From Pavona decussata (lineage: Eukaryota), in NCBI GenBank assembly GCA_977016875.1, contig CDRNST010000188.1:620001-684000 (forward strand): a DNA stretch of 64,000 nucleotides. Direction: 5' to 3'. A model generated the notes under the pieces. It saw only the letters and a list, made by a program, of their open reading frames with translations, made no database searches and was not told the origin of the DNA. Of the stretch, positions 17,529 through 63,080 are shown piece after piece. The stretch's first letter is position 1, and each line of letters opens with the position of its first letter. The position numbers were made by a program, and so were the translations under genes.

Positions 17529-17635
17529 TGCGGAAGAATGGTTTCTAAGAAAACCTCTTACTTTCTTAGAAAACAGTACGCTGTGGGGGAGGTGTTGGGG
17601 GAAGGAGGGGGTGTAGGGAGAGAGATAGGGGCTCA
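17529..17635 (-). promoter_or_regulatory. K2 proximal promoter: ETS-like CGGAA, tandem GAS, G-rich tract
   Basis: TTCTAAGAA 17543-17551 and TTCTTAGAA 17563-17571 (11-bp spacer); both sites conserved at 56542 and 56562. Confidence 0.6.
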
Positions 17636-17884
17636 AGCGGAAATGTGTGGTGGGTAGTTAGATCCACACTCTAAACCACATGATCCTGTCTGTTGTTGCA
17701 ATAAAATGTTGAGCTCTCCTCGTCCTGTGTGTGTTTGCTTATTTCGTTTCTGTGGCCATTGAATGTGGTATACTGTGATGAGGTTGCTGGCCCCACGCGC
17801 AGTTTGGCAGAGCCCTGTTAGCCTGATGACCCATTACCGCCTCGTGCGGCGTACGAGGACGTAGGGTTGGACTTTGGGTGACGA

Positions 17885-18031
17885 CAGGCCATTTCCGAGT
17901 TGCTGTGAACCTCATTATGAAAGCGAGGCTTAGTGCAAAAGCTTTTGATATAAAAATTAGTTTTGTTTTCATTGAATGAAAACTAATTTTCATAAGAAAA
18001 ACTTTGCACTTAGCCTCGCTTTCATAATGAG
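17885..18031. mobile_element. Palindromic MITE (aggccatttccgagttg family), right end lost
   Basis: ggccatttccgagttgctgtgaacctcattatgaaagcgaggc...gcctcgctttcataatgag; paralog 57609-57778 keeps the right end caactcggaaatggcctatt. Confidence 0.75.
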
Positions 18032-18269
18032 CGTCTGGATAATGGAAGATATGTGCAATTTAAATTGAATCCGAACAAACAGAATCCAAGTAAACAGAGG
18101 GCGTTCACTAATTTGCATGTGGGAAACAACAGTAAACAATTTTGCTTTAATGTTCTTGTTTGGTGACCCTGAAAATCCGTTGCGACTTAAACTGATTTCA
18201 GTAGTGACCTTCGCTTCTCACAAAAAGTACAAGTCAGCTGTGGAAGTCACTTTAATTTTATTAAGAAAC

Positions 18270-18650
18270 TCTACATACAATTTATTTGTACCAAGGCCAT
18301 TTACTGAAGCTGGAAAAAACAGCTTCCTTAATAGAGAGGCGGTTCTCTGGAATAGTCTGCCTGGTAAAGTCAAAGGTCAGACAAGCTTGAAATCATTTTT
18401 ATTACATTTGTAATTTTTTCTTATATATTTATCACCTTAGTCTCCTATTTATACATTATAGTTCTAATTATCTCCTGTTGTATGTTTTATTATATGTTTC
18501 CACGCTGTACTATATTTGAAATTTTATTCATAAGACTTAATACTCCTGTTTCCCATATTGTATGAGTTATTGTATCGTTTACACGGCTCTCTGGAAGAGC
18601 ATTTTTGTGAAAGGGATTCCGTGTTTAAATAAATGAAGATGATGATGATG
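18270..18650 (+). mobile_element. LINE (CR1/L2-like) 3-prime end
   Basis: ORF2 tail YNLFVPRPFTEAGKNSF..AVLWNSLP...SLKSF followed by aataaa and (gat)n tail. Confidence 0.7.
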
Positions 18651-18664
18651 TATTTCTTCCGCGG

Positions 18665-19105
18665 TATTTTAGATACTTCGTGAACCTCGGCAGCCGTTGT
18701 TCGATGTTTGTCGTACTGTCAAGTATTTAGAGTTATCGCTCGCGTTAATCGTACGGCTTGAAAATGTAACCTTGCGTTCTCGGTCATCTGATTCTACTTA
18801 CCATTGCATACCTAAGGCCAACATTCCCTCCAAACACTGGCTGTACAAACGCGCCATAAAACTTATATCTCCGGCAATCGTGACAAAAAACCCGCTCTAG
18901 GATAGCATAAAAGAGTGCACCAAGGGAGAACACACTCCAACAGCATCACGAAGGTGCAATGTATTAATCACAGGACGCCTTTTAACGCATGGTCGGTGGA
19001 AGTCCACTTGCCAAGTTTCTGCCTAACTGTGAGCACTTAATCATCAACTTTAACCTTCAAAGTTTTGGCTGGGTCTCCAAGGCTTGACCCCCTTTTACAA
19101 TGATT
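18665..19105 (-). pseudogene. Decayed kinase paralog with internal deletion
   Basis: DNA homologous to C-lobe (ccattgcatacc, ccataaaactt, cccgctctaggatagc) joined to N-lobe (ccaagtttctgcctaactgtg); GAS at 19189-19197; deleted in duplication copy 2. Confidence 0.75.
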
Positions 19106-20864
19106 TTTCACACACTATTGACTATTCTTGGATCTGGATAGATCAAATCAGCCAGTCCTTTATTCGCTTCGCAAAGCTGGAGGGCGGTTTCTAAGAAGGC
19201 GCTCATGGTTTTCTAAGATGGGGGCGTGGTTCGGGGGCTGTGAGGTGTGAGAGGGGAGGTGGGGTGCCGGGTAGTTGTAAGCGTTTTATGGCGACGTAAG
19301 GACAGTGGTAGATTCAACTCTGTTGAATCGACGTAGCGCCACAGTTTCTTAAGAAACTTACCCCCTTATTTATGTAGGTCAGATTGTCCGTCGGTATTAT
19401 TTTTCTTCCGCAAGTATACCAAAAACGCTCCTAGAACTGGCTAAATTATTACCGGCTTGTGTGGGTTGATCAGCTTGTTCAACATAGAGGGATTCCTGAT
19501 AAAAATCGTCAAAAGACTTCTAGGAATTTTCAACCTTCAAGCTTTAAAACAATAAAGAATTACCTCTTGCGTAGCGTTCGCTTAGTCAGTGTTGCTGAAA
19601 ATACGACCAGCTTTTGCCCGCTAATTGACAAGTTGACGTTGTTTTTTTCCCTCTGTCCCCTTATTGGTGTTAATTTTCGTCACATCATTGTCAAAAGCTT
19701 GTAGATCCACAACAAATTTTGATAATGTCATGACGAAATTTATCATCTATATAAGATTACCGATGCTTAAAAAGCTTGATGCAATTTGTTATTGCTATTT
19801 TTACATTATCAAATCGCAAACAAAGGAACTTCAATCGCCGGCTCATGGAGAAGAATGCAACTTAAAAAGAGAGTTAACGCAAGAAATAATAGACAATTTC
19901 AGGCTCAGAGACTAAACTTCGAAAACAAGAACTCAACAATACACTGAAGAATCAAACTGTCGAAACTAACCCGTATTCCAGCCGGGATAATTTTCCCAGA
20001 AAAGTCCTCTTTAAAAGCACTGTTTCGGTTACGGTAATTTCAGTCTCGACAGTATTAAATTCGCATTCACTGCCAATTTGCAAGTCGAATCTCAGCAAAC
20101 ATCAACTTTCCGCACTTGAGCCTCGCTTTACTAATCTCTTGTCTTGCCTCATTCAAGAAGTCTAGTTTCGAGTCTGAGTGCTCGCCAATACATGAATGCA
20201 AAACTAAAGTTTTACATTTTCGCCAAATAGCGTCATCTCCGACTTTTCATCCGTCTGTACTCTACTTGATGATAAAAATTAGCCAATGAGCGCGCGAGAA
20301 ATTTGACAGTTATTGTAAAATACTTTATTGATCTAGAAGTATGCAAGCTATAAAATAATCCAAAATGTTTTTTGTTTTGTTTTGTTTTAGTTTTACAATA
20401 TTCTTTGGAATATTGGGGAAAACGTCTCATACATAGCCAGAAAAGTATTGAAAAATCTTAGTTAGACTAATTTCAAAAGAGGTTACCCTCCAGCATACCC
20501 GGTTAACTCTGCATGGGATTTTGACTCCTCATATCCGAAGACCGATCCCTCCTGTGGAAGAGCAGGTGACTTTGTTATCTAACCACTTTAGAAAATTTAT
20601 CAATTTGTTTGAGCGAACCTTTATAAGGAAAAGATTTTGGAAAAAGTGGCCGCCTGACGTGGGTTAAATAACTGCTTCTTGTTTTTGCCTAAGCATGGCT
20701 TAAAACTCTTGCTGCTAAAAATGCTAAACGCGAAATCCAGCTGAACGCCTTGCGAAAACTGTTGTGCCTTCGCTATAAACAGTATAAATTAATCTGCACC
20801 GAACCCAACGAAGCTATGTGTAATTTTTAAAAATCTATCGAAGTTCTTCAAGAAAGTCTCCACG

Positions 20865-21000
20865 TTACATTATCGTACAAAAGGCTCAGAGAACTTCTTT
20901 CGACCAGGACTCAAGTTCCGCTTCTAATAACTGTTCGTGAACCTCGGTGGGGCTTGTTCTATCATCCCTTTCGTACTGCAAGACACATAGAGTGATTCCA
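20865..21000 (-). pseudogene. Kinase C-terminal remnant ending CTIM
   Basis: Minus strand reads ...EVL*AFCTIM*; homologous to the K4 3-prime end; paralog at 59763-59897. Confidence 0.7.
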
Positions 21001-21911: not shown

Positions 21912-21924
21912 TTTTACAACGTTT

Positions 21925-22346: not shown

Positions 22347-22499
22347 CCTTTTAACAGACAAACATGTTTGCCTGGTGCGCTTCCATGTGAACCGGAACAG
22401 TTCCTTAGAAAATGACAATGTGCTCTAAACGTGGAGGAGCTGAAAGGGAAAGATAGGTTGGTGTGAGGGAGGGGTTGAAGGCTTTAGCGAGTCTCTTAA

Positions 22500-23689: not shown

Positions 23690-24664
23690 TTATATAATGA
23701 TACAATAAGGTCTTAGAGCTTCTACCAACAACGACACTTGTTTCTCCTCCAATAGCTCTTTGTGAACATCGGCGGCACTTGGTCGGTCATTTCCTTCGTA
23801 CTGCAAGGCGTCGAGAGTGATTCTTTGCTGATCGTTGGAACCTTGTGCTCGACTTGAAAATTTAATGCTTATGTTTGGATTATGCATCGCCATTGCATAC
23901 CCAAGGCCAACCTTGCCTAAACCACGAACACGCTTGAAGGCGCCATAAAACTTTTTCCCGTTAATGTCGACAAAATCTCGCGCGAGGATAGCGAAAAATA
24001 GAACACCAAGCGAAAATACGTCAGCCTTTTCGGTGTAATGACCATCGAACACTTCAGGAGCCAGCCAGTTTGGCAAGCCAACCGCAGTGTTCATGTAGTA
24101 CTCTGCATAACTGCTCAGCCATGAGTAATCGTCTAGTCGAGCGTCGGTTTTTAGCGCGATAAACTCTCGTGCCAACCCAAAGTCAGCTAACTTTGCAACG
24201 TCCTCTGCTGTCAAGAGCACGTTATCAGGTTTTAAATCGCGGTGAACCACTCCACACGAGTGAAGATAAGCGAGGGCATCCGACGTTTGGAGCATCCATT
24301 GCAAATTCAGCTCTTCACTGCTTGGTCGAGTAAGGCGCTCGTTCAAGTTCCCGCCAGCACAGTACTCAGTCAAAATCAACATGTGAAGGCCTTGGGCATC
24401 AGAGAGCTTGTCCGCTCCTTTGACGGCTATCACATTCTCGTGATAGAGTTCGTTGAGTGTCATAGCCTCCTGAATGGCATTGATAATTTCTGAAGCATCC
24501 TCGCATAATACATCTTTTAAAGCATAAACTGTGGAAGAAGATACGTCTTTTACTTTGTAGACGACGCCAAAAGCGCCATTTCCAAGTGTTCGCTGGATTC
24601 TCAGCCTTTTTGATCCAACTTGAAGCCTTGCATTTGTTGGACGTCTCACAAAAGCTTGCTGCAT
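23690..24664 (-). CDS. K4: STK35/PDIK1L-like kinase, CaaX CIII
   Basis: 324-aa intact ORF with all catalytic motifs; ends RPYCIII*. Confidence 0.92.
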   Translation of the reverse strand: MQQAFVRRPTNARLQVGSKRLRIQRTLGNGAFGVVYKVKDVSSSTVYALKDVLCEDASEIINAIQEAMTLNELYHENVIAVKGADKLSDAQGLHMLILTEYCAGGNLNERLTRPSSEELNLQWMLQTSDALAYLHSCGVVHRDLKPDNVLLTAEDVAKLADFGLAREFIALKTDARLDDYSWLSSYAEYYMNTAVGLPNWLAPEVFDGHYTEKADVFSLGVLFFAILARDFVDINGKKFYGAFKRVRGLGKVGLGYAMAMHNPNISIKFSSRAQGSNDQQRITLDALQYEGNDRPSAADVHKELLEEKQVSLLVEALRPYCIII

Positions 24665-24764: not shown

Positions 24765-24819
24765 TTCTTAGAAAAGCGCCAATGTGCCTCATTAGCATAT
24801 TTAACGGCTTTTCCCAGAA
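24765..24819 (-). promoter_or_regulatory. K4 proximal promoter GAS elements
   Basis: TTCTTAGAA 24765-24773 and TTCCCAGAA 24811-24819; first site also retained at 32739-32747. Confidence 0.55.
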
Positions 24820-29071: not shown

Positions 29072-30043
29072 TTACGAAATCGGGATTAAAACATTGGATG
29101 TCTCCTTCATCCAGAATTGTATTTCTTCTGCTGTATTCTCTAATGTTTGGTAAACCTCTTCAGCGCTTGGTCGATCATCTTCGTTGCAGTGCAAAGCTTT
29201 CAGAGTTGCACTTTGCATTTGTTTTGACCCTTGCGCTCGACTTGAAAATTTAGTTTTGATGCTTGGTAATACTACCATTGCAAACCCAAGGGCATCTTTC
29301 CCTCCAAAATGTGAAGGAGCGAACGCACCATAATACTTTTCTTCGCCAATCGTGACAAAATCCCGCTCCAGGATCGCAAAAAAGAGCGCACCAAGGGAGA
29401 AGACATCGGCTTTTTCTGTGTAACGGCCCTTGAAAACTTCAGGTGCCATCCAGTATGGAGTACCAATTTTTGAGTTCATGTAGTATTTTGTATAGCTGCC
29501 CGGCCATGGATCCTCGCCTAGTGGAGTGTTGATTTTGAGTGCGAGGTACTCTCGAGCCAGGCCAAAGTCGGCTAATTTAACATCCTCAGCCGAGGTCAAG
29601 AGCACATTTTCAGCTTTCAAATGTCGGTGAACCACTTCTTGTGAGTGAAGGAAGGCAAGCGCTGCTGCACATTGTTTCATCCATTTGAAGTTTACTAAGT
29701 TACTACTCGGTCGAGCCAGGCGTTTGTTTAAATTGCCACCAGCGCAATACTCGGTCAAAATCAGCATGTTGAGACCTTCAGAACTACGGTATTGATCTGC
29801 TCCTATCACTTCGATCAAATTCTCATGAGTGACTTGATTCAATGTTTGAACTTCGCGAATAGCATTGCAAATTCGCGATTGATTTACGCACAGGACATAT
29901 TTTAACGCGAACTCTATGGACGTCCTGTCGTTTGTAACTTTGTACACGACACCGAAAGCCCCCTCGCCAAGTTTCTGCCCAACTGTGTACACTTCATCTT
30001 CAACTTCAACCTTTGTCAGCTCGCTCTGCACTACTTGCATCAT
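29072..30043 (-). CDS. K5: intact-ORF pseudokinase (HRD to HRH), no CaaX
   Basis: 323-aa ORF; catalytic loop HRHLKAEN (CAT codon at 29621-29623); DFG and APE intact; ends VLIPIS*. Confidence 0.85.
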   Translation of the reverse strand: MMQVVQSELTKVEVEDEVYTVGQKLGEGAFGVVYKVTNDRTSIEFALKYVLCVNQSRICNAIREVQTLNQVTHENLIEVIGADQYRSSEGLNMLILTEYCAGGNLNKRLARPSSNLVNFKWMKQCAAALAFLHSQEVVHRHLKAENVLLTSAEDVKLADFGLAREYLALKINTPLGEDPWPGSYTKYYMNSKIGTPYWMAPEVFKGRYTEKADVFSLGALFFAILERDFVTIGEEKYYGAFAPSHFGGKDALGFAMVVLPSIKTKFSSRAQGSKQMQSATLKALHCNEDDRPSAEEVYQTLENTAEEIQFWMKETSNVLIPIS

Positions 30044-30127: not shown

Positions 30128-30240
30128 AGCGGAAGTGTGGTTTCTAAGAAAACGCTCTCTGTTTTCTAAGAAAACTGGCGGGGGAGGAATAGGGGTGGGG
30201 GAGATTGTGAGTTGTGCGGGGAGGGGCAGGGTGGGTAGTT
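30128..30240 (-). promoter_or_regulatory. K5 proximal promoter: ETS CGGAAGTG, tandem GAS, G-rich tract
   Basis: TTCTAAGAA at 30142-30150 and 30164-30172 (13-bp spacer). Confidence 0.6.
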
Positions 30241-32636: not shown

Positions 32637-32891
32637 TGTGTCAGTGACTTGCGCTCTTTGGACGTGAATGTTTTCGACGAAAATATAAAAAAAAAATTGT
32701 TGTATTAGTTGCGCGCTTATTCTACGGTGAGAAAGGATTTCTTAGAAAAGCGCGCATGTACCTTATTAGCATATTTCAACCGCTTTTCCTACAATTTCCA
32801 ATTGCCTACTTGCCCAGCCTCCCTGGTGCTTAGTCAGCTGTCGCAAATTGTATGCAGTAATGACAAACAGTAAAATGTAAATATTACCCAT

Positions 32892-37563: not shown

Positions 37564-38553
37564 TTACGAAATTTGGCTAAAAACATTGGATGTCTCCTTC
37601 ATCCAGAATTTTATTTCTTCTGCAGTATTCTCCAATGTTTGGTGAGCCTCGTCAGCGCTTGGTCGATCATCTTCGTTGTACTGCAAAGCTTTTAGAGTTG
37701 CACTTTGCATTTGTTTGGACCCTTGCGCTCGACTTGAAAATGCAGCTTTGATGCCTGGTGATCCTACCATAGCATACCCTAGGCCAACTTTCCCTCCAAA
37801 CCATGCGGGACGCACAAATGCACCATAATACTTTTCTCCTCCAATCGTGGTAAAATCCCGCTCCAGTATCGCACTGAAGAGTGCACCAAGGGAAAAGACA
37901 TCGGCTTTTTCTGTATAACGGCCCTTGAAAACTTCAGGTGCCATCCAGTATGGAGTACCAACTTTTGAGTTCAAGTAGTATTTAGTATAGTTTCCCAGCC
38001 ATGATTCCTCGTCTAGTGGAGTGTTGATTTTGAGTGCGAGGTACTCTCGAGCCAAGCCAAAGTCGGCTAATTTGACATCCTCAGTCGAGGTCAAGAGCAC
38101 ATTTTCAGGTTTCAAATCTCGGTGAACCACACCACGTGAATGAAGGAAGGCAAGCGCTGCTGCACTTTGTCTCATCCATTTGAAGTTTACTAAGTTACTA
38201 CTCGGTCGAGCCAGGCGCTTGTTTAAATTGCCGCCAGCGCAGTACTCGGTTAAAATCACCATTTCGAAATCGTCATAAACACTACAAAACCAGTCTGCTC
38301 CTATCACTTGGATCACATTCTCATGAGTGACTTGATTCAACGTTTCAACTTCGCAAATAGCATTGCGAATGGTATTGCGAATTCCCGATTGATTTACGCA
38401 CAGGACATACTTTAACGCGTACTCTTTGGACGTTCGGTCGTTTGTAACTTTGTACTCGACCCCAAAAGCCCCCTCGCCAAGTTTCTGCCCAACTGTGTAC
38501 ACTTCATCTTCAACTTCAACCTTTGTCAGCTCGCTCTGCACTACTTGCATCAT
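37564..38553 (-). CDS. K6: STK35/PDIK1L-like kinase, no CaaX, beta-2 Val to Glu
   Basis: 329-aa intact ORF; GEGAFGVEYK; IRNTIRNA duplication; HRDLKPEN; ends VFSQIS*. Confidence 0.88.
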   Translation of the reverse strand: MMQVVQSELTKVEVEDEVYTVGQKLGEGAFGVEYKVTNDRTSKEYALKYVLCVNQSGIRNTIRNAICEVETLNQVTHENVIQVIGADWFCSVYDDFEMVILTEYCAGGNLNKRLARPSSNLVNFKWMRQSAAALAFLHSRGVVHRDLKPENVLLTSTEDVKLADFGLAREYLALKINTPLDEESWLGNYTKYYLNSKVGTPYWMAPEVFKGRYTEKADVFSLGALFSAILERDFTTIGGEKYYGAFVRPAWFGGKVGLGYAMVGSPGIKAAFSSRAQGSKQMQSATLKALQYNEDDRPSADEAHQTLENTAEEIKFWMKETSNVFSQIS

Positions 38554-43626: not shown

Positions 43627-46154
43627 TTTTACTCTGTTTATCGGACAGAATTTACTTTTCTTGTACCAGGGAAGATAATATATATCACCAGTCTCTTACT
43701 CGGTTCGTAAAGCGGAAGGGTTGTTGCTAAGAAAACGCTCTTTGTTTTCTTAGCAAACGGGCGGGGGAGGGACAGGGGAAGGGAGACTGTGAGTTGTGAG
43801 GGGACGGGCAGGGTGGGTAGTTGTAAGGTTTTTACGGCGACGCGTGGACAGTCGTAGTTTTGCAGCTTCGATCAATCTGTTGTTTAGGAAATTTGATATT
43901 ACCAGTCGCTTATTCGTTTTGGATATCGGGAGTGCAGTATCTTAGTGCATAAAAGGCTCTCAGTTTATCTAATTAATCTGGCAGGGGAAGGGTTGGGGTG
44001 TAGGGACCGTGAGGTGTGAGGGGAGAGGTGCATGAGTGGGTAGTTGTAAGCTTTTTAAGCCGATGTCGTGATAGTCGTAGTTTTGTAGCTTCAATCAACA
44101 GATTGGTCGGACAGTCCGTAAACTGATCGAGTATTCATCCACGACATATCGGCGGAGCCTTTTTGAAGCCGCTTCTAGAACTAGCTAAAATCCTGCCGGA
44201 CTATGTGGGTTAATCAGCTAGTCCAAAATGTATAGTCTCCCGATGAAAACAAGAGGCTTCCAGGAAATACCCCCACTACTACAAGATGTTTGAGACGTTT
44301 GAATTAAGTCAAGCGAAGTTTGAGTGAGTGCTATTGAAATACGACCACCTTTGCCTTATACAGGTTTATTGATCTAGAACTGTGCGAGTTATAAAATAAT
44401 ACAAAATGTTCTTTTTAGGTTTACATCGTTAGCGTCTTGTACATCGCCAGAAAAGCATTTTAAACTTTACATGGGATACACTCGTTACTTCTCGAATCCT
44501 AAGACCTGTTACGAGAGATTTCATTTCACTTTAATCCCGGACTTTAATACGTTTGGCAAGCGCGTTTCAATAGCTTGGCATTGAAATTGAATATTTAATC
44601 AGGTAGTGAATAACAATAGCTGGTATGTCTTGAAACGAATATTTAATCAACTTGAATGTATCCGCGAGAAGTGTACTTTTCTGTTGCATTAACAAATGTA
44701 GACTAGTGATTTACCATTCGTTATGTTACTGGTGTTTTCGCTTTGTTGCGTGAAATTTAGCTGTTTAGCTTTTGTAGTTTTCGGTTTTGGTCGTTCGTTC
44801 ATTACAAACCAGCATAGAGTTTTCAAACACAGAGCTCTTATTTTATCAAGTTCGACATTTGGCTTGTACACGTGTAAGAGCACATGTACTTTGCTCGATC
44901 ACGCGAGTCCCTAAAGCCCTCTGTCCTGTAATCTTACGACTCAGCAATTCTTTTGATGAACGTTCTTTTCCGCGAACAAAGTTCAATATTCTTTGTTAAG
45001 GATGTAGTCCGGAAAAGTACTCTCCCAAATAAGGAACCCCTAACAATTAAACGCACGTGAAAGTAATACAGTCGAACCTGAATATAACGGCCACCCTCGG
45101 GACTTGAGGAACTGGCCGCTTAATACAGGATACTAATACTTAATTTTCAATGGCGCATCATACAAAATCATTTCATGCAAGGATACAGTAGGACAATCAA
45201 CACTCTTTCAAGCGATCAACACTTTAAACAAAGTTCAGTGCCAACTTGTAACTTAATGGTATAATATACGTAACATTGTGTAAAAGTACTTTGCGGTAAA
45301 TTTTTCTCTACTCTTCTACGGTATACAGCACTGTATTTCTATGACTTACAGTTCACAATAAAATATCTCATTCCGTCATTTCATAGTTGTTACGTTCGAA
45401 GTGGAGTTATGAAGAACTTTATAGTTCATAGACCACTGGCTCGAATGAAAATAAACTTTATATAAATACAACCTTCATCGACGCCATCTTCAAAATAACG
45501 CAGGGGTAATTAATAATCCCAAGGAGTATTTTTTGACAAAATAGTAAACCGAAGAGTATTAAAAAAAAAAGACTTTCGTGCCCTCCTTCAAGTGAAGAGA
45601 AGCTTAGAAATCATCTGCTACGTCCGATTTACTTACAACCCTAACCGGACAGCGCGATTAAGAAACTTTCGACTGGAGTCGTTTTATACAGCCAAAACAC
45701 CACATAACATGATAACCACAGTTTGATCTTGGATCGACGTTGTTGGCGTATTTGTTATGGTCCTATGCCTTGTTGTGTATGCACTCTCTAATCCGGCTAC
45801 GATTATTACTAGTACTAAGAATTCTACTGCACAGGCTATTTCTCTAGACCGTTTCTTATTCACGAGTTGGCTCATGGGGCCCTTTGATTTTGAGTTGTCT
45901 GGATATTTCTTCATCGATTTTTGTCAAAATTGTCTCTCAGAAGCAAATTTCTAGAGTTGCTATTTGGTTCTCTCTCCTTGAGATTATCATTAGCTAGTGA
46001 TGTACAAAAACTGAACTTTTCAGACATTCAACAAACTGTGTGGTTGTACCTGTTTTTAATACCATACTGAGCGTAACAGGACGGGCTGCAGTTAATTTTA
46101 AACAAGATATTGCAATTAATATTTCAATCATGCACTAAAGTGGTTGAAAACGTA

Positions 46155-47017: not shown

Positions 47018-47986
47018 CTAAAAACACTGAGATGTCTCCTTCATCCAGAATTGTATTTCTTCGGCCAAATTTTCCAATTTTTGGTGAACCTTGTCAGCGC
47101 TTGGTCGATCATGTTGGTTGTACTGCAAAGCTTTTAGAGCTGCTCTTTGCATTTGTTTGGACCCTTGCGCTTGACTTGAAAATGCAGCTGTGATGTTTGG
47201 TAAATCTACCATTGCATGCCCAAGGCCAACTTTCGCTCCAAAAAGTTGACCTAATTGAGACATAAACACAAACGCACCATAATACGTTTCTCCGCCAATT
47301 GTGATAAAATCCCGTTCCAGGATTGCAAAAAAGAGCACACCAAGGGAAAAGACATCGGCTTTTTCTGTGTAACAGTTCAAGAAAACTTCAGGTGCCATCC
47401 AGTATGGAGTACCGACGTTTGAGTTCATGTAGTATTTAGTATAGTTGCCCAGCCATGAACCATCGACTAGTGGAGTGGTGGTTTTGAGTGCGAGGTACTG
47501 TCGAGCCAAACCAAAGTCGGCTAATTTAACATCCTCAGCCGAGGTCAAGAGCACATTTTCAGGTTTCAAATCTCGGTGAACCACTCCACGTGAATGGAGG
47601 AAGGCAAGCGCTCTTGCACTTTGTCTCATCCATTTGAAGTTTACAAAGTCGCTACTCGATCGAGCCAGGCGCTTGTTTAAATTGCCACCAGCGCAATACT
47701 CGGTCAAAATCAGCATGTTGAGACCTTCAAAACTAAGGCCTGCTGCTATCACTGCCACCACATTCTCATGAGTGACTTGATTCAACGTTTGAACTTCGTG
47801 AATAGCATTGAGAATTTCCGATTGATTTACGCACAGGACATATTTTAACGCGTACTCTTTGGACGTCCTGTCGTTTGTAACTTTGTGTACGACGCCGAAA
47901 GCCCCCTCACCAAGTTTCTGCCCAACTGTGTACACTTCACCTTGAACTACAGCTTTTGTTGGCTGGCTCTGCAAGGGTTGCATCAT
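47018..47986 (-). CDS. K7: STK35/PDIK1L-like kinase, catalytically intact, no CaaX
   Basis: 322-aa ORF; [20 protein letters not shown]; a 1-nt insertion near the end gives SQCF* instead of VFSPLS*. Confidence 0.9.
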   Translation of the reverse strand: MMQPLQSQPTKAVVQGEVYTVGQKLGEGAFGVVHKVTNDRTSKEYALKYVLCVNQSEILNAIHEVQTLNQVTHENVVAVIAAGLSFEGLNMLILTEYCAGGNLNKRLARSSSDFVNFKWMRQSARALAFLHSRGVVHRDLKPENVLLTSAEDVKLADFGLARQYLALKTTTPLVDGSWLGNYTKYYMNSNVGTPYWMAPEVFLNCYTEKADVFSLGVLFFAILERDFITIGGETYYGAFVFMSQLGQLFGAKVGLGHAMVDLPNITAAFSSQAQGSKQMQRAALKALQYNQHDRPSADKVHQKLENLAEEIQFWMKETSQCF

Positions 47987-48069: not shown

Positions 48070-48190
48070 AAGCGGAAGTGCTGTTTCTCAGAAAACGCGC
48101 TCTGTTTTCTTAGCAAACGGGGGGGGGGGGGGGGGGGATGGGATAGGAGTGCGGAGACTGAGATGTGAGAGGAGGGGCGGGGTGGGTAGT
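48070..48190 (-). promoter_or_regulatory. K7 proximal promoter: ETS, GAS pair, G-rich tract
   Basis: GCGGAAGTG; TTCTCAGAA 48085-48093; TTCTTAGCA 48107-48115 (13-bp spacer). Confidence 0.55.
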
Positions 48191-55467: not shown

Positions 55468-56469
55468 TTATTGGATCGCACAGTAAGCCCTAGAAATCGC
55501 TGTCATCCAGAATCGTAGATCGTCCTCGGTGTCTTGAAACACTCTCGTTATCTCTGCAGCACTGGGTCGATTGTCTTTGGTGTACTGTAAGGCATTGAGA
55601 GTTACGTCTTGCATAGCGTTGGATCCTCGTGCGTCGCGTGAAAATACAATGTCGATGTCTGCATCAAATTTTGCCATTGCATACCCCAGACCAATTTTGC
55701 CGGCACGAGGAACACGAACGAACGCACCGTAACATCTTTTTCCATTAATCGTGATGAAATCTCGTTCCAGGATCGCGAAAAAGAGAACACCCAAGGAAAA
55801 CACGTCTGCTTTCTCTGTGTAATGCTGGTGATAGAACTCCGGAGCCATCCAGTGTATTGGGCCAGTGCCTGAGGTCATATAATGCTGAACATAGCTGGTC
55901 GTCCACAAGCCGCCTCGTCGAGTGTTGTTTCGTTTTAGTGCAATGTACTCTCGAGCCAAACCAAAGTCGGCCAGCTTTACATCCTCCTCGGCGGTCAAGA
56001 GCACGTTATCTGGCTTTAAATCGCGGTGAACCACTCCACATGAGTGAAGGTAAGCAAGGGCAGCCGCTGTTTGACGCATCCATTTGAAATTCATTAAGTC
56101 ATTACTTGGTCGAGAAAGGCGCTCGTTCAAGTTTCCCCCTGCACAGTATTCGGTCAAAATCAACATGTGAAGGCCTTGATCATCACGGAACTGGTCTGCT
56201 TCTATCACAGAGATCACGTTGTCGTGACAGATTTGGTTCAGCGTTTCAACCTCGCGAATAGCATTATGAATTTCTGAAGCATTTAAACAAAGAACATCTT
56301 TTAACGCATAGACACTGGACGTTTCCTCGTCTCTAACTTTGTAAACGACACCAAAAGCCCCGTTTCCAAGCCTCTGCTGCAGAATCAGTGCGTTGTCTCC
56401 AACGTAAACCCTCTGCGGTTGACGTACAAAGGCTCTTTGCATCATGCCACTGCTCTGAACTCTCTGCAT
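55468..56469 (-). CDS. K8: recent duplicate of K2, CaaX CAIQ
   Basis: 333-aa intact ORF differing from K2 at only a few residues. Confidence 0.92.
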   Translation of the reverse strand: MQRVQSSGMMQRAFVRQPQRVYVGDNALILQQRLGNGAFGVVYKVRDEETSSVYALKDVLCLNASEIHNAIREVETLNQICHDNVISVIEADQFRDDQGLHMLILTEYCAGGNLNERLSRPSNDLMNFKWMRQTAAALAYLHSCGVVHRDLKPDNVLLTAEEDVKLADFGLAREYIALKRNNTRRGGLWTTSYVQHYMTSGTGPIHWMAPEFYHQHYTEKADVFSLGVLFFAILERDFITINGKRCYGAFVRVPRAGKIGLGYAMAKFDADIDIVFSRDARGSNAMQDVTLNALQYTKDNRPSAAEITRVFQDTEDDLRFWMTAISRAYCAIQ

Positions 56470-57252
56470 GACAATATTGATTCACAAGTGAAAACAAGAT
56501 CGACAATCAGTCACTCGATCCGATCAATGCGGAAAAATGATTTCTAAGAAAACGTCTTCCTTTCTTAGAAAACAGTACGCTGTGGGGGAGGTGGTGGGGG
56601 AAAGGGGGCGGGGGTGTAAGGAGAGAGATGGGGGCCCAAGCGGAAACGTGGTGGGTGGTTAGATCCACACTTCAAACCACACGATCCTGTCTGTTGCTGC
56701 TATAAAATGTCGTATTCTCTTCTGCATTTTCTTAAGTGTACATGTCGGCATTTGAGAATTTTGGCTCTACAAGCTACGCAGTTCCTAAGCAAGGCGCTCT
56801 GAAATTATTTCTTAAAGGTCAAGCCAGGATTTTGAAAGTTAGTTAGCTAAGAATTTTGTGCAGTTTGAAGTAATCTGTCTCCTGTAGTCAATCGAATGAC
56901 GCTTGTAAGAGCATTAAAATTTGAATTGGTCAGTGAATCACACCCACCTCTGTGACTTTTATTACCAAGACGAAACCCTTGTTACGAGAGTTCCTCGACT
57001 ATTCTCACTTATTTTTGGTGTCCTAGGCCTTGACTTGATCCTCCTTACGGTCTGTGGTGCATAAGACTGACACCAGAGCTCTCCTCGTCCTGTGCGTGTT
57101 TGGTCATTTCGTTTCTGTGGCCATTGAATGTGGTATACTGCGATGAGGTCGCTGGCCCCACGCGCAGTTTGGCAGAGCTCTGTTAGCCGTCATGACCCAT
57201 TACCGCCTCGTGCGACGTACGAGGACGTACGATTGGACTTCGGGTGACAATA

Positions 57253-57608: not shown

Positions 57609-59762
57609 TTTCCGAGTTGCTGTGAACCTCATTATGAAAGCCAGGCTTAGTCCAAAAATTTTTTCATATGAAAATTAGTTTTGTTTGCATATGAATGAAA
57701 GCTAATTTTCGTAAGACAAACTTTGCACTTAGCCTCACTTTCGTAATGAGGTTCAAAGCAACTCGGAAATGGCCTATTGAACGTCTGGATAATGGAAGAT
57801 ATGTGCAATTTAAATTGAATCGGAACAAACAGAATCCGAGCAAACAGAGGGTGTTAGCGTTCACAAATTTGCATATAGGAAACAATATTTTAACTTTTTT
57901 GCTTTAGTGTTCTCGTTGGGTGACCCCAAAAATCGGTTGAGACTTGAACTGATTTCAGTAGTGACTTTCGCACAAAAATGCAAGTAAGCTGTGGAAATCA
58001 CTTTAATCCAGAATTGTATTAAGAAACTATGTGTACGGGCCCATTTTTACAACGAATGGAAACAAACAACGTTTTTTCCAATGAATACTTCTTTTACTTT
58101 TGAAACTGATTGCCGTTGATTCTCGCCTACTTTAGCATCTAATTTAGTTCGTTCAAAGTCTCCTAGGAGGTCTAATTTCCCGCCCTGAACGCGTGATTTG
58201 CACGCGGGCTTGTACACTATACATACAATTTATTTGTACCAAGACCATGTACTGATGCTGGAAAAAACAGCTTCCTTAATAGAGGGGCGGTTCTCTGGAA
58301 TAGTCTGCCTGGTAAGGTCAAAGTTAAGACGAGTTGAAATCATTTTTATTACATTTGTAATTTTTTCGAATATATTCAAGACCTTAGCCTCCTATTATAC
58401 ATTATAGTTCTAATTATCTCCTGTTGTATGCTTTATTATTTGTTTTCCGCATTGTACTATTTTTTAATGTTCTTTTTCTTTTATTCAAGTACCTCATGCG
58501 TAGCGTTCGCTGAGTCAGTGTTGTTGAAAATACGACCAGGTTTTGCCCGCTAATTGACAAGTTGACGTTAGTTTCTTTTCCCTCTGTCTCCTTATTGGTG
58601 TTAATTTTCGTCACATCATTGTCAAAAGCTTGTGGATCCACAACAAATTTAAATAATGTTCTGACGAAATTTATCATCTAATAGAGGACCCATGCATAAA
58701 AAACTTGAGGCAATTTGTTATTCTTATTTTTACATTATCAAATCGCAAACGAAGGAACTTCAATCGCCGGTTCATCGAGAAGAATGCAACATAAAAAGAG
58801 AGTTAGCGCGAGAAATAGTAGACAATTTCAGGCTCAGAAACTAAACTTCGAAAACAAGAACTCAACAATACACTGAAGAATGAAACTGTCGAAACTAACC
58901 CGTATTCCAGCTGAGATAATTTTCCCAGAAAAGTCCTCTTTAATTTCAGTCTCGACAGTATTAAATTCGCATTCACTGCCAATTGCAAGTCAGACCTGAA
59001 CAAAGATCTTCAACTTTCCCCCCTAGAGCCTCGCTTTACTAATTTCTTGTCTTGCCTCATTCAAGAAGTCTAGGTTTGAGTCTGAGTGCTCACCAATAGA
59101 TGAACGCAAAACTAAAAAGTTTTACATTTTCGCTTATAGCGTCATTTCCGACTTTTCATCCGTCTGTACTCTACTTGATGATAAAAATTAGCCAATGAGC
59201 GTACGAGAAATTTCACAGTTATTGTAAAATACTTTATATTATTGTTCTAGAACTAGCAAGCTATAAAATAATCGAAAATTTTTTATGGTTTTAGTTTTAC
59301 AATATTCTTTGGAATATTAGGGAAAACGTCTCATACATAGCCAGAAAAGTATTGGAAAGTCTTAGACTACTTTCAAAAGAGGTTACTCTCCAACATACCC
59401 GGTTAACTCTGCATGGGATTTTCACTCCTCATATCCGAAGAGTAATCCCTCCTGTGGAAGAGCAGGTGACTTTGTTATTTAACCACTGTAGAAAATTTAT
59501 CAATTTGTTTGAGCGAAACTTTATAAGGAAACGACTTTGGGGAAGGGGCGGCCTCACGTGGGTTAAATAACTTCTTCTGGATTTGCCTAAGCATGGCTTA
59601 AAACTCCTGCTGCTAAAAATACTAAACGCGAAATCCAGCTTAACGCCTTGCGAAAACTGTTGTGCCTTCACTATAAACGGTATAAATTAATCTGCACCGA
59701 ACCCAACGAAGCTATGTGTAATTTTTAAAAATCTATCGAAGTTCTTCAAGAAAGTCTCCACG

Positions 59763-59897
59763 TTACATTATCGTATAAAAGGCTCAGAGAACTTCTTTCG
59801 ACCAGGACTCAAGTTCCGCTTCTAACAACTGTTCGTGAACCTCGGTGGGGCTTGTTCTATCATCCCTTTCGTACTGCAAGACACAGAGAGTGATTCC
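59763..59897 (-). pseudogene. Kinase C-terminal remnant (paralog of 20865-21000)
   Basis: Direct duplicate; terminal CTIM mutated to YTIM. Confidence 0.7.
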
Positions 59898-60634
59898 AAA
59901 AATTTGGAGTTGTCTTTAGTCTTGAAGATGCTTTAATTTGATTTAAAACAGGGTAATTCCTTCAGTAATTATAAGAACAAAGTTACTGGTATCAACGGAA
60001 GCCTTCACGCCTAATTACAATGTTAACATTTTTTTAGAAATACTAAAGAGATCACACATCAGAATGATAGAAATGTAAAACTATTAAAAATCTACAAAAC
60101 TACATTGAAACTGATCAAAAACCATGCCGCCATGATAGAAAAATGCCTTTCTTGTTTACTCTAATTTAACTCTCGGTAGTCGAATGTGGTTGCTCTGTCT
60201 AGAGGTCCTTTCGATGCAATCCTTATTAAGATTAAAATAATTAATAAAAACTGCAGACAAATGCTTTTCAGTACTTTCTTAACTAAGGCAAGAACATGCT
60301 TCTCTCGTGCCTCCCTGGCACTCAGCCAGGTGTCACAAATTGTATGCGTAGCTAGTCGTGGATGCTCGATTTTAATCCGTTTAAAAGACATTCCTGAAAT
60401 CTCCGGCATTAAAAGAGCTCCTCTTGGTCTCGAATATTGAGAGCTTTCTTTAATTTGCTTTAGTTAGCTAACACTAATGGATTGCGTGATAAGAACAAGT
60501 CATAAAGAATTTGTGTTAAGCGTAGTAGAAGCACGCCACAGACAACACAGGCTTTACAACATGCAGGTTAAACAAATCAATGTACAAAAGTCTAGCCAAT
60601 GTCACAAGTTCGGTTCCAAGACCAATTTCCATAG

Positions 60635-61258
60635 TTATGAGATCGGACACAACACTTTGGAAGCTTCATTCTTCGCAGCAGCTGCCCAGAATTGCATTTC
60701 TCCCGCCATGGTTTCAAATTCCTTGTGAATCGTGGCAGCACTTGGTCGCTGACGCGGGTCGTACTTCAAAGGATCAAGAGCTATTCTTTGCATTTGTTTT
60801 GATCCTTGCGCGTGCTCTGAAAATGAAACTTGACGTATGTCGCTAGACATTGCCATGGCAAGTCCAATGCCAATTTTTTTTTCACCGAATGGATATGAAA
60901 AGACACCATAAAACTTTTTTCCGTCAATAGCGAGAAAGTCCCGCTCTAGAATCGCGGAAAACATGACACCAAGCGAAAATATGTCGGCCTTTTCCGTGTA
61001 ATGGCCCGCGAACACTTCTGGAGCCATCCAGTGTATCGTGCCAGCCCAAGTTCCCATGTACTTTGTAGAGCGGTAGCATCGTCGAGTGTCTGCTATGAAC
61101 GCGTCATACTTTCGAGCTAATCCAAAGTCGGCCAATTTAACGTCCTCGCTTTCTGTTAAGAGCACATTTTCAGGCTTCAAATCACGATGGACGACTCCGT
61201 GTTCATGCAGGAAGGTAAGAGCTGATGCACACTGTTTCATCCATTTGAAATTCACAAA
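60635..61258 (-). pseudogene. K3-C (K9): open C-terminal half of a kinase, N-lobe deleted, CaaX CPIS
   Basis: [31 protein letters not shown]...DFG...WMAPE...VLCPIS*; fused upstream to a MITE. Confidence 0.85.
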
Positions 61259-61819
61259 CGTCTCAAGTCTCAAGTCTCACGATTTTGCCGTGACACTCAC
61301 GGTTTTCAGTTCAGTCTCACGACGAGACACAAAAATTTCACGATAAACAGAGTCACAAGCTGAAAGGATACAATTTCCTTCTATAATTTCATTTTTGGCT
61401 TGCTTAGGTGACTTTCTTGTGCCAATTCTGTGCAAATCATTCTATAGTTAGTAAACAGTCCTAAGTAGCTGGACACACAGTCCATGAGCTGTTCCAAATT
61501 AGGTTTTCATTACCAGTCTCTCGCATTTTGGTCACGTTTTCAAAATGGCGGAAATTGCTGTGTTTACCTGGTTTTCTCTGCCGGTTGATCAATTTCCAGA
61601 TTTTTTTTACCTCAGTCTCCAGATTTTCGGTGTTTTGAGGTCGAGAGGTCTGCCGTTTAACAGACAAACATGTTTGCCTGGTTCGCTTCCATGTGAACCG
61701 GAACAGTTCGTTAGAAAATGATCACGTGCTCTAAACGTGGAGGAGCTGAAGGGGAAAAATAGGTTGGTGTGAGGGAGCGGAGGGGGAGGAGTTTGAAGGC
61801 TTCAGTGAGTCTCTTAATT

Positions 61820-62200
61820 ACACGAATTCTCTATCGTTTATCTTGCAGTTTCGCAGGTATGAACGGTCGGTTGAAAATGCATTCCGCTTGTTTGATTTGT
61901 TACTAGTGCAATACTCAAAAACAGCATGTGGACGCCTTCATAACTTTGAAACTGATCTGTTCCTATCGCCACAATCACATTCTCGTGATTTATTTAATTC
62001 AACGCTTCGACTTCACGAAAAGTTACGAATTTCCGCTGTATTAACGCACATGACATCTTTCAACGCGTAGTTGGCGAACGTCCTCAGGTCTTTGTAAACA
62101 ACACCGAAAGTTTCTGCCGAACTGTGCGCACATCATCTCCATCTTTAAACTCTGTTCGCTCACTCGTGAAGACTTGGCTTATTTTTTACACTGCTTATCA
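61820..62200 (-). pseudogene. Decayed kinase N-lobe fragment (paralog of 22500-22860)
   Basis: Direct duplicate; GAS TTCTGAGAA upstream at 62263-62271. Confidence 0.72.
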
Positions 62201-63080
62201 GACAGTACTGATTGACTATTCCTGTATCAGGGAATTTAATATCACCAACCCGGGAGGCCGGTTTCTGAGAAAAGGCTCTCGGTTTTTCTGATTAAACTGG
62301 CGGGGTAGGGGTGGAGGGACTATGATGTCTAAGGGGACAGGCGAGTGGGTAATTGTAAACATTTAAAGGGGGCGTCGTGACTGCTCAGACAGTCGCTCAA
62401 TCGACTATTCTCCCTCAAGAATATCAATACAGCTTTTTGGAGCCGCTCTTAGAGCTAACTAAAATCTTGTCGGATTGTGTGGGTTGATCAGCATGTCAAA
62501 ATGCATGGGTTCCTGATGAAAATAGAAGGTTTCCAGGAATTCCACAATTTTTCAAGTCTCCCATTGCTATAAGAAATTTAATTATCTTGGAGACGGTTGA
62601 ATTAGGTCAAGCTCAGGTTGAGTCAGTGTTGTTGGAAATACGACCAGCTATTGTCTTGTAAAACTTTCTTGATCTAGAAATATGCGGGTTATAAAATAAT
62701 AAAAAACGTTCTTTTTAGTTTAACATCGTTCTTTGGAATATACAGTTTATAGATAACGTCTTGTACAATGCCAGAAAAGTATAGAACAGTCTTAGTTACT
62801 CTAACCTTCAGTGAAAAGAGGTTACCCTCCAGCATACCCGGCTAGCTCTACATTGGATGTTCACTTCTCATGGGGAAGGGGCTGCCTGATATGGGTTTAA
62901 TTTTTGCTTTTGGATTTGCCTCAACGTGGCTCAAAGCTCCTACTTCAAAAATATTTAACGGGAAATGCAACTGAACGCCTTGCAAGAACTGTAGTGCCTT
63001 ATCTAATTAATTTGCACCGAACCCAACGAAGCTATGTGTAATTTAAACCTATCGACCCTCGTCACGAAAACTTCTTAGTG

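What the first reader, a model, noticed from the sequence alone, without database searches (positions are those of the whole stretch)
17543..62271. Paired STAT-type GAS elements at a fixed position upstream of nearly every array gene
Seen: TTC(T/C)N(A/G)GAA 70-130 bp upstream of the start: K2 17543+17563, K8 56542+56562 (11-bp spacers), K5 30142+30164 (13 bp), K7 48085 plus variant 48107, K6 38652, K4 24765+24811, pseudogenes 19189, 32739, 62263 and variant pair 43725/43747. Usually next to GCGGAAG (ETS-like) and a G-rich tract. The K2, K4 and K5 promoters align poorly otherwise. Known: TTC-N3-GAA is the STAT consensus, and tandem sites about two helical turns apart support STAT tetramers. Caveat: paralogous copies are not independent, and the motif alone arises by chance every few kb.
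Basis: partly seen in the sequence, partly recalled or inferred. Interest (0 to 1): 0.8.

Follow-up and report, generated by a model that had tools for sequence, protein, structure and literature searches.

The report
Conserved STAT-type sites, coral kinase array
A cluster of duplicated, intronless kinase genes in a stony-coral genome carries a short palindrome of the STAT type (TTCYNRGAA) just ahead of almost every gene, and other corals keep it while the surrounding DNA has diverged beyond alignment, so it is very likely a real control element and a candidate direct STAT target in a cnidarian.

Summary
The window is G000:C188:620001-684000 of a stony coral. It carries a minus-strand array of intronless PDIK1L/STK35-like kinase genes.

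Of 22 intact array-clade genes from this genome and seven foreign contigs, 21 have such a site starting 78-128 nt before the ATG. Four genes of the divergent K1-type sister clade have none. Flanks carry about 0 bits, and synonymous sites between K2 orthologues are near saturation (dS 0.8-1.4). An unbiased word count finds TTC-N3-GAA as a top-ranked word.

The genome has a STAT gene whose DNA-contact exon matches only STAT5 and STAT6 among solved structures.

Three corrections:
- Only the proximal site is universal. Pairs belong to particular clades, with gaps of 9-15 or 32-72 bp.
- Transcript contigs begin 4-11 nt upstream of the proximal site. The sites therefore straddle the transcription start rather than lying 70-130 bp upstream of it.
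- Paired sites show no genome-wide excess.

STAT binding is inferred and has not been shown. The composite of site plus CTTCCGC also precedes unrelated intronless genes.

The parts
16469..17470 (-). K2, intronless PDIK1L/STK35-like kinase gene (333 aa)
   Evidence: ORF; Pkinase 163 bits; named relatives in Oculina, Acropora and Montipora
17530..17536 (-). ETS-like CTTCCGC (gene strand), 6 nt downstream of the K2 proximal site
17543..17551 (.). K2 proximal GAS-type palindrome TTCTTAGAA (gene strand), 73 nt before the ATG
17563..17571 (.). K2 distal GAS-type palindrome, 11-bp gap from the proximal site
17583..17633 (-). C-rich tract (gene strand) upstream of the K2 pair
   Evidence: same layout in K5-K8 and in K2-type genes of other corals
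23690..24664 (-). K4 kinase gene (324 aa)
24765..24773 (.). K4 proximal GAS-type site, 101 nt before the ATG
24783..24803 (-). TATA-like / octamer-like box TAAATATGCTAATGAGGCACA between the two K4 sites. It begins 30 nt upstream of the proximal site.
   Evidence: related boxes in K11, L025, L024 and L037 K4-type genes
24811..24819 (.). K4 distal GAS-type site (TTCTGGGAA on the gene strand), 37-bp gap
29072..30043 (-). K5 kinase-like gene (323 aa; catalytic HRD replaced by HRH)
   Evidence: covered by contigs of run X1 from 29048 to 30161
30129..30135 (-). ETS-like CTTCCGC of K5
30142..30150 (.). K5 proximal GAS-type site. The X1 contig's 5' end (30161) lies 11 nt upstream of it.
30164..30172 (.). 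K5 distal GAS-type site, 13-bp gap
37564..38553 (-). K6 kinase gene (329 aa)
38652..38660 (.). K6 proximal GAS-type site. The distal copy is decayed.
47018..47986 (-). K7 kinase gene (322 aa)
48072..48093 (-). K7 composite: proximal site TTCTGAGAA plus CTTCCGC. The distal copy at about 48107 has one mismatch (TTGCTAAGAA).
55468..56469 (-). K8 kinase gene, a 98% identical duplicate of K2
56529..56570 (-). K8 module: ETS-like variant TTTCCGC (gene strand), proximal site 56542-56550 and distal site 56562-56570
32739..32747 (.). Proximal site kept in the K4-type pseudogene promoter (pseudogene 32043-32663)
43725..43755 (.). Decayed pair in the K5-type pseudogene promoter (GAA changed to GCA in the proximal copy)
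19189..19197 (.). Site in an orphan K5-type promoter remnant (C-rich tract, decayed distal copy). Only a kinase fragment lies nearby, at 18802-18936.
62263..62271 (.). Site in a pseudogene promoter remnant. Its duplicate at about 22881 is cut by a deletion.
8161..9222 (+). K1, a divergent kinase of the sister clade. It has no site within 400 nt upstream and serves as an internal negative control.

Best explanation
The palindromes are conserved binding sites on DNA for a dimeric transcription factor. The most likely factor is the coral's single detected STAT, which is of the STAT5/6 type. The sites form part of a compact promoter cassette.

On the gene strand the cassette reads as follows:
- An upstream C-rich tract (K2 and K5 types) or a TATA-like box (K4 and K10 types).
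- Then (G)TT-TTCYNRGAA-A at or just after the transcription start.
- In most lineages, an ETS-like CTTCCGC exactly 6-7 nt further on.
- The ATG about 70-100 nt downstream.

The proximal site is the constrained core. A second site (full or half) 9-15 bp upstream in the K2 and K5 clades could allow cooperative binding of two dimers through the N-domain. The predicted effect is signal-dependent switching of the whole kinase array. Because the sites overlap the start site, either activation or occlusion is possible.

Shown here: the motif, its position relative to the ATG, its conservation against diverged flanks, the presence and type of the STAT gene, and transcript contigs that include the proximal site.

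Inferred: that STAT is the binding factor, the sign of regulation, and tetramer use.
For: Excess in the window: 25 sites against 7.3±2.9 expected.

Position: 21 of 22 intact array-clade genes have a site starting 78-128 nt before the ATG. These genes come from this genome, Oculina patagonica, a Tara Pacific coral metagenome scaffold and five other contigs. The 22nd gene (K11) keeps only the distal site. The four K1-type genes have none within 400 nt.

Conservation against flanks:
- Nine promoter clusters have flank identity below 65%.
- Flank information content is about 0 bits. T at -1 and A at +9, which were not part of the search pattern, carry 1.3 bits each.
- De novo gapped words: TTC-N3-GAA is in 10 of 10 representatives, tied for first with two words that overlap the same palindrome. 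The maximum in 200 shuffles was 8.
- dS between K2-clade orthologues is 0.27-1.4.

Age: promoter types follow gene clades, and each clade holds several assemblies, so the element predates those splits.

Loss of constraint: the sites are decayed or deleted in 2-3 pseudogenes.

The candidate factor:
- A STAT gene lies at G000:C8:3.6097-3.6235 Mb. Its exon pieces are co-linear: STAT_int, STAT_alpha, STAT_bind x2, STAT_linker (37.9 bits) and SH2.
- The N-terminal exon aligns to STAT1 residues 1-43, including the QWL tryptophan.
- The exon with PVVVTVHGNQ matches only STAT6 and STAT5A/B among solved structures, E 4e-7.

Literature: STATs recognise TTCN3-4GAA, and the sea-anemone STAT has an N-terminal domain (PMC3670263). 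STAT5 tetramer sites most often have gaps of 11-12 bp (PMC4990345); K2, K8, L036 and L051 have 11.

Reuse elsewhere: the composite TTCYNRGAAA-N5-7-YTTCCGC occurs 24 times in the genome against 3 for the reversed control. It also precedes two unrelated intronless Prok-JAB genes by 99-117 nt.
Against: - No binding or expression-dependence data exist. No cnidarian STAT motif was found in the paper library.
- Transcript-type contigs begin 4-11 nt upstream of the proximal site: K5 in run X1 and five of seven Logan contigs of P0069. The site is therefore transcribed, which is an unusual place for an activating GAS.
- An RNA contig of a K4-like gene in run X15 runs at least 138 nt upstream of the ATG. 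Contigs L036 and L050 reach 171 and 204 nt upstream. The start site is therefore unsettled.
- The pair gap is not fixed (9, 11, 13, 15 bp, and 32-72 bp in the K4 type). The rigid STAT5A model gives little feasibility at centre-to-centre distances of 18 and 22 (PMC4990345).
- Paired sites show no genome-wide excess: 324 against 954 for the reversed control.
- The STAT_int, STAT_alpha and STAT_bind exon hits are each below Pfam's cut-off.
Confidence: 0.55

Rival explanations
1. The palindrome is a real, conserved DNA site, but another dimeric factor binds it. One candidate is a BCL6-like BTB zinc-finger repressor, which in vertebrates recognises a GAS-like TTCCTAGAA core. Another is an uncharacterised cnidarian factor. 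Sitting on the start site, such a factor would keep the array silent until it is removed.
For: The site overlaps or directly follows the likely transcription start, which is a typical place for a repressor. The extended consensus TTTCYNRGAAA is not diagnostic of one factor. No binding data exist.
Against: Most sites are TTCT[A/T]AGAA rather than TTCCTAGAA. The genome has a STAT of the type expected to read TTCYNRGAA. No BCL6-like gene was looked for here.
Confidence: 0.25
2. The element acts as part of the core promoter or of the mRNA leader. In that case it would be an initiator-associated motif read by the basal machinery, or an RNA element in the first bases of the 5'UTR. The two copies can pair into a 12-bp hairpin that might control translation or stability.
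For: Transcript contigs start 4-11 nt upstream of the proximal site. TATA-like boxes lie 30-43 nt upstream of it in K4- and K10-type genes. In K2 the two copies fold into a 12-bp stem.
Against: Folding is no better than shuffled sequence: z = -0.64, -0.61, 0.03 and 0.35. Single-site genes cannot form the hairpin. TTC and GAA never change in the 21 proximal sites, so no compensatory change is seen and the stem has no covariation support. Each copy is a palindrome on its own, as expected for a protein dimer on DNA. The motif is absent from the K1-type kinase promoters, so it is not a general core element.
Confidence: 0.12
3. There is no function. The sites are inherited copies of an ancestral promoter, spread by tandem and segmental duplication or gene conversion.
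For: K2/K8, K4/K4b, K5/K5b and K6/K6b are recent duplicates inside a ~39-kb segmental duplication, so the counts within the window are inflated.
Against: The site survives in nine promoter lineages whose flanks are below 65% identical, and across assemblies with dS near 1. Gene conversion would homogenise the flanks too. The composite also occurs at non-homologous genes.
Confidence: 0.03

Closest known systems
Mammalian GAS elements, especially tandem STAT5 sites (TTCYNRGAA) bound by tetramers
   Same: Same 9-bp palindrome with Y at position 4 and R at position 6. Tandem copies have an 11-bp gap in K2, K8, L036 and L051, which is the commonest tetramer gap (PMC4990345). In several genes the second copy is only GAS-like. 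The cognate factor in this genome has a STAT5/6-type DNA-contact loop and an N-terminal exon.
   Different: The coral sites overlap the transcription start or 5'UTR rather than lying upstream of it. The gap drifts (9-15 bp). Many genes have one site. There is no cytokine context and no binding data.
Drosophila STAT92E target sites (TTCN3GAA), named from my own knowledge and not checked here
   Same: An invertebrate with a single STAT5-like STAT that uses clustered TTCN3GAA sites at stress and immune genes.
   Different: The known fly sites lie in enhancers, introns or upstream promoters. No kinase-array target is known.
BCL6 binding sites (GAS-like core), named from my own knowledge
   Same: Palindromic TTC...GAA core. 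BCL6 can compete with STAT, acts as a repressor and can lie near start sites.
   Different: The preferred core TTCCTAGAA is rare here. No BCL6-like gene was sought in this genome.
STAT-plus-ETS composite promoter elements of vertebrate immune genes, named from my own knowledge
   Same: A GAS-type site with an ETS core (GGAA, in CTTCCGC) at a fixed short distance. Here the distance is 6-7 nt in the K2, K5 and K10 types, and the same composite sits in the Prok-JAB gene promoters.
   Different: The fixed 6-nt spacing and the position at the transcript's 5' end are not, to my knowledge, described for those elements.
PDIK1L / STK35 (NKF4) kinases
   Same: The array proteins have a full protein-kinase domain. 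Their named relatives are annotated PDIK1L-like or STK35-like in Oculina, Acropora and Montipora.
   Different: The coral genes are intronless, tandemly expanded (at least 12 intact copies plus pseudogenes on one contig) and often end in a CaaX-like box. K5 and K5b have HRH in place of HRD. Orthology to the vertebrate genes was not tested.

Membership tests
GAS-type STAT binding element | Palindrome TTC-N3-GAA (STAT5 type: TTCYNRGAA) | tested here: met
   25 exact matches in the window. 21 of 22 array-clade genes have one 78-128 nt before the ATG.
GAS-type STAT binding element | Under selective constraint, i.e. more conserved than the flanks | tested here: met
   Flanks carry about 0 bits against invariant TTC/GAA plus conserved T(-1) and A(+9). 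It is a top-ranked de novo word, 10 of 10 against a null maximum of 8. dS reaches 1.4. It decays in pseudogenes.
GAS-type STAT binding element | A STAT with a DNA-binding domain is encoded by the same genome | tested here: met
   Co-linear exon hits on C8: STAT_alpha, STAT_bind x2, STAT_linker 37.9 bits and SH2 24.1 bits. The DNA-contact loop exon matches STAT5 and STAT6, E 4e-7.
GAS-type STAT binding element | Lies in the promoter or an enhancer, upstream of the transcription start | tested here: inconclusive
   Contig 5' ends lie 4-11 nt upstream of the proximal site, but other contigs reach further upstream. All runs were held as contigs, so no exact start could be read.
GAS-type STAT binding element | Bound by STAT in vitro or in vivo | not testable with these tools
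   Needs EMSA, DAP-seq or CUT&Tag.
GAS-type STAT binding element | Target gene expression depends on STAT activation | not testable with these tools
   The one read-laying run showed only that K5 and a K4-like gene are transcribed.
Tandem GAS for STAT tetramers | Two sites with a gap near 6-7, 11-12 or 16-17 bp (PMC4990345) | tested here: inconclusive
   Gaps are 11 (K2, K8, L036, L051), 13 (K5), 9 (L025) and 15 (L024). They are 32-72 in the K4 type. K10-type genes have a single site.
Tandem GAS for STAT tetramers | The STAT has an N-terminal interaction domain | tested here: met
   The first exon aligns to STAT1 residues 1-43, including the tryptophan in QWL. The scores are weak: STAT_int 15.9 bits and PDB E 0.028. 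The sea-anemone STAT is reported to have this domain (PMC3670263).
PDIK1L/STK35-like protein kinases | Complete eukaryotic protein kinase domain | tested here: met
   Pkinase 145-173 bits for K1-K8. Catalytic motifs are intact except HRH in K5 and K5b.
PDIK1L/STK35-like protein kinases | Orthology to vertebrate PDIK1L/STK35 | not tested
   Only the names that sources give to coral relatives were seen.

The most novel reading that the evidence does not exclude
A STAT5/6-like factor controls a coral regulon of tandemly expanded, intronless genes. The regulon would include the PDIK1L/STK35-like kinase array and also Prok-JAB and perhaps Sel1-repeat gene clusters. Control would run through a fixed cassette of a GAS-type site, or a tandem pair, overlapping the transcription start, plus an ETS site 6 nt downstream. 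These would be the first direct STAT targets defined in a cnidarian, and an old inducible-promoter design that predates the splits among the corals sampled here.
Probability: 0.35. Interest if true: 0.7.

Novelty: new member of a known kind. Interest (0 to 1): 0.55.

Why it matters
Cnidarians have STAT, but no target genes, no binding motif and no clear biological role for it turned up in the paper library searched here. This array offers a short, testable DNA sequence that selection has kept in many coral lineages, next to genes whose expansion suggests a role in a fast-evolving process such as defence or symbiosis. If STAT binds it, the array becomes a ready read-out of STAT activity in corals. 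The cassette could also serve as a compact inducible promoter for cnidarian transgenesis. The same composite at unrelated intronless genes hints at a wider regulon that could be mapped by motif.

Tried and rejected
- The Pfam STAT_bind search of the genome at the default threshold found nothing. Relaxed thresholds gave co-linear exon hits.
- Look-ups of the Acropora and Montipora proteins P0085, P0089 and P0094 found no contig. The 'complex' coral clade could therefore not be checked.
- Genome-wide paired sites show no excess: 324 against 954 for the reversed control. The pair as such is not a genome-wide signal.
- The metagenome scan with the composite pattern returned unrelated soil, gut and other contigs. 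The one coral-project contig, L078, holds no kinase. The gut-metagenome contigs were not used.
- The Logan contigs L040-L042 and L071/L072 are co-linear with genomic DNA or have identical ends. They say nothing about the transcription start.
- The RNA-hairpin idea gets no support, with z from -0.64 to 0.35.
- I planned to test whether the coral SOCS-type genes carry GAS sites.
- Paper searches for PDIK1L or STK35 in corals and for STAT motifs in corals found nothing relevant.
- No complex prediction was run, because the question concerns protein-DNA binding.


Full report
**What the window is.** The window is G000:C188:620001-684000 of a 602-Mb assembly. Its long ORFs are intronless genes of about 325 aa with a complete protein-kinase domain. 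The closest named relatives are 'PDIK1L-like' or 'STK35-like' kinases of the stony corals Oculina patagonica, Acropora and Montipora, so the genome is a stony coral.

The array genes lie on the minus strand:

| Gene | Window coordinates |
|---|---|
| K2 | 16469-17470 |
| K4 | 23690-24664 |
| K5 | 29072-30043 |
| K6 | 37564-38553 |
| K7 | 47018-47986 |
| K8 | 55468-56469 |
| K4b | from 63087 to past the window end |

The array continues to contig position 718624 with K5b, K6b, K10 and K11. A segmental duplication of about 39 kb makes K2/K8, K4/K4b, K5/K5b and K6/K6b recent pairs. K1 (8161-9222, + strand) belongs to a sister clade separated by a long branch.

**The observation.** TTCYNRGAA occurs 25 times in the window against 7.28±2.90 in shuffles, and no shuffle reached 25. 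Every coordinate in the finding is correct. The sites lie 73-147 nt before the ATGs of K2, K4, K5, K6, K7 and K8.

On the gene strand the common module reads as follows:
- a C-rich tract;
- GTT-TTCTNAGAA-A, then a gap of 11-13 nt, then GTT-TTCTNAGAA-A;
- 6 nt further on, CTTCCGC;
- the ATG.

In the six-promoter alignment, the longest invariant block is TTTTCT.AGAAA. Mean column identity is only 55%.

The pseudogene promoters at 19189, 32739 and 62263 keep the proximal site. The one at 43725/43747 has point changes in both copies. The duplicate of 62263, at about 22881, is cut by a deletion. The K3 pseudogene has no site.

**Is it more than inheritance?** I collected 26 intact kinase ORFs from eight sources:
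- the 134 kb around the window in this genome;
- an Oculina patagonica contig (L023);
- three long-read ENA assemblies (L024, L025, L051);
- a Tara Pacific coral metagenome scaffold (L037);
- a JGI contig (L050);
- a Logan contig (L036).

Of the 22 array-clade genes, 21 have TTCYNRGAA starting 78-128 nt before the ATG. K11 keeps only the distal copy. All four K1-type genes, from three genomes, have none within 400 nt.

After clustering, nine promoter lineages have flanks below 65% identical. Information content is about 0 bits in the flanks. T at -1 and A at +9, which were not part of the search pattern, carry 1.3 bits each.

A word count that does not assume the motif puts TTC-N3-GAA, TCT-N2-GAA and TCT-N3-AAA (overlapping parts of the same palindrome) first, each in 10 of 10 representative promoters. 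The best word in 200 shuffles reached at most 8.

Between K2-clade orthologues dS is 0.27 for the nearest and 0.66-1.44 for the rest. Unconstrained sequence should therefore be largely randomised.

The protein tree shows that the four promoter layouts (K2, K5, K4 and K10 types) follow gene clades. Each clade contains several assemblies, so the element predates those splits. Simple inheritance and gene conversion do not explain this pattern.

**Layouts.**

| Type | Layout |
|---|---|
| K2 | C-rich tract plus a pair; gaps 9 (L025), 11 (K2, K8, L036, L051), 15 (L024); then CTTCCGC |
| K5 | As K2, with gap 13; distal copy decayed in K6, K6b and K7 |
| K4 | Distal site, then a TATA-like/octamer-like box (TAAATATGCTAATGAGGCACA, window 24783-24803), then the proximal site 30 nt after the start of the box; gaps 32-38 bp, and 72 in one Tara gene |
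| K10 | CC(T)TTTATGG or CCTTATATGG box 40-43 nt upstream of a single site, followed by CTTCCGC |

Only the proximal site is universal.

**Where transcription starts.** All available runs were held as contigs, so no exact start could be read.

Run X1 covers only repeats and the K5 gene body. Unique intergenic DNA has zero depth, so the run behaves as RNA. Its K5 contig spans 29612-30161 and ends 11 nt upstream of the proximal site, inside the spacer. Comparing the K5, K5b and K6 promoter sequences by eye, K5b is identical there and K6 shares only about 28 nt, less than an assumed assembly word of 31. A paralogue branch point is therefore an unlikely cause of that contig end.

Seven Logan contigs of protein P0069, from seven runs in two accession series, have 5' ends 49-87 nt before the ATG and very different 3' ends. 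Five of them begin 4-7 nt upstream of a TTCCGAGAA. The TATA-like boxes 30-43 nt upstream of the proximal site fit a start there.

Against this, a K4-like contig in the true RNA run X15 runs at least 138 nt upstream of the ATG, with 46 further unaligned letters. Contigs L036 and L050, of unknown library type, reach 171 and 204 nt upstream.

The safe statement is that the proximal site is transcribed and probably lies within the first 5-15 nt of the main transcript. It is not 70-130 bp upstream of the start.

**Who could bind it.** A STAT gene lies at G000:C8:3609731-3623470 (+). Its exon pieces, searched one by one, hit STAT_int (15.9 bits), STAT_alpha, STAT_bind (twice), STAT_linker (37.9 bits, over the cut-off) and SH2 (24.1 bits, over the cut-off), in the canonical order.

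The first exon aligns to STAT1 residues 1-43, including the tryptophan of the QWL motif. From my own knowledge, that residue is needed for N-domain contacts. The exon with PVVVTVHGNQ matches only STAT6 and STAT5A/B among solved structures, with E about 4e-7.

The literature gives three relevant points:
- STATs read TTCN3-4GAA, and the sea-anemone STAT has an N-terminal domain (PMC3670263).
- STAT5 tetramer sites most often have gaps of 11-12 bp, with secondary peaks at 6-7 and 16-17 (PMC4990345).
- JAK and STAT are reported to co-occur in Cnidaria (PMC13203501).

No paper in the library deals with these coral kinases or with a cnidarian STAT motif.

**Rivals.**
- RNA hairpin between the two copies. 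It is possible in K2 (a 12-bp stem), but folding energies do not differ from shuffles (z -0.64 to 0.35), and single-site genes cannot form it. TTC and GAA never vary in the proximal sites, so no compensatory change is seen.
- Another palindrome-binding factor, perhaps a repressor, given the position on the start site. This cannot be excluded.
- Non-functional inheritance. This is very unlikely, for the reasons above.

**Beyond the array.** Paired sites are not in excess genome-wide, at 324 against 954 for the reversed control. The composite TTCYNRGAAA-N5-7-YTTCCGC is in excess, at 24 against 3, and five of the 24 are in this array.

Two more, on C165, lie 99 and 117 nt before the ATGs of intronless ORFs of 360 and 461 aa with a Prok-JAB domain. 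A Sel1-repeat gene array on C28 carries a pair about 200 nt before the ATG. On C26, a ~200-bp module with ACCGGAAGT plus a pair at gap 12 recurs at least 10 times. This reuse at non-homologous genes argues for a functional cassette and hints at a regulon.

**Verdict.** The STAT reading is the best available but remains unproven (about 0.55). The 'paired' and 'fixed position upstream' parts need the corrections above. It is a new instance of a known kind of element, in a phylum where no STAT target was found described. Its position on the transcription start is unusual.

**Earlier notes of the scan.** Two earlier notes bear on this report. One says K5 is a pseudokinase with a perfect pair, and the other says K5, K6 and K7 lost the CaaX cysteine. 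Both agree with what I saw: HRH replaces HRD in K5 and K5b, and the C-termini are LIPIS, FSQIS and TSQCF against YCTIQ and YCIII.

Noticed in passing
window 13000-24500 versus 52000-63900, continuing beyond the window: A segmental duplication of about 39 kb, 98-99% identical, copies the block K2-K7 into K8-K6b. Counts of array genes and sites within the window are therefore not independent.
   Followed up: partly
window 2277-2933 (-): A 218-aa ORF with a bZIP_Maf domain (76 bits) lies next to the kinase array.
   Followed up: no
window 8161-9222 (+); L025 and L051: K1-type kinase: 348-353 aa, ending in CCIA or CCIT, on a long branch from the array clade. It lies beside the array in three genomes and never carries the palindrome.
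   Followed up: partly
window 29072-30043 (K5) and contig 689608-690579 (K5b): The catalytic loop reads HRH instead of HRD, and KPxN reads KAEN, so these are probably pseudokinases. Both GAS-type sites are intact, and contigs of run X1 cover the gene.
   Followed up: partly
window 25047-26837: A repeat with very high depth in RNA-type runs (up to about 7000 in X15), with many variants and joints. It is probably an expressed transposon between K4 and K5.
   Followed up: no
window 17913-18029: A near-perfect inverted repeat of about 117 bp (MITE-like) lies 350 bp upstream of the K2 promoter.
   Followed up: no
window 21676-21854: An inverted duplication sits at the 5' end of the K3 pseudogene. 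ORFs on both strands encode nearly the same peptide. No GAS-type site is left there.
   Followed up: no
window 30673, 39173, 44258, 49547: TTCCAGGAA recurs about 600 nt upstream of K5, K6 and the 43-kb pseudogene, and at 49547, which is 1561 nt upstream of K7. All lie inside repeated intergenic segments. It could be a further conserved site or just part of the repeat.
   Followed up: no
G000:C165:147403-147425 and 164700-164722 (L063, L064): The same composite (TTCCCGGAAAG-N6-CTTCCGC) lies 99-117 nt before the ATGs of two intronless ORFs (360 and 461 aa) with a prokaryote-type JAB domain (PF14464, 47 bits). Both are preceded by TTGCGTGACAT.
   Followed up: partly
G000:C28:1300984, 1343839, 1375738 (L045): A pair TTCCAAGAA-N13/14-TTCTCGGAA occurs three times on C28. 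At the copy examined (L045) it lies about 200 nt before an intronless 305-aa Sel1-repeat ORF; the other two copies were not fetched.
   Followed up: partly
G000:C26:1783988-2086303 (L043, L044): At least 10 copies of a ~200-bp module with a perfect ETS site (ACCGGAAGT) followed by TTCTCAGAA-N12-TTCTGAGAA. No gene was identified nearby.
   Followed up: partly
G000:C56:5454579-5476560 and C87:1642957-1662175: Tandem arrays of open frames of 322-397 aa ending in a SOCS box.
   Followed up: no
K10 promoter (contig 709900-709960), L050, L071: A CC(A/T)6GG box (CCTTTTATGG or CCTTATATGG) lies 40-43 nt upstream of the single site. It could be a TATA box or an SRF-type CArG box.
   Followed up: no
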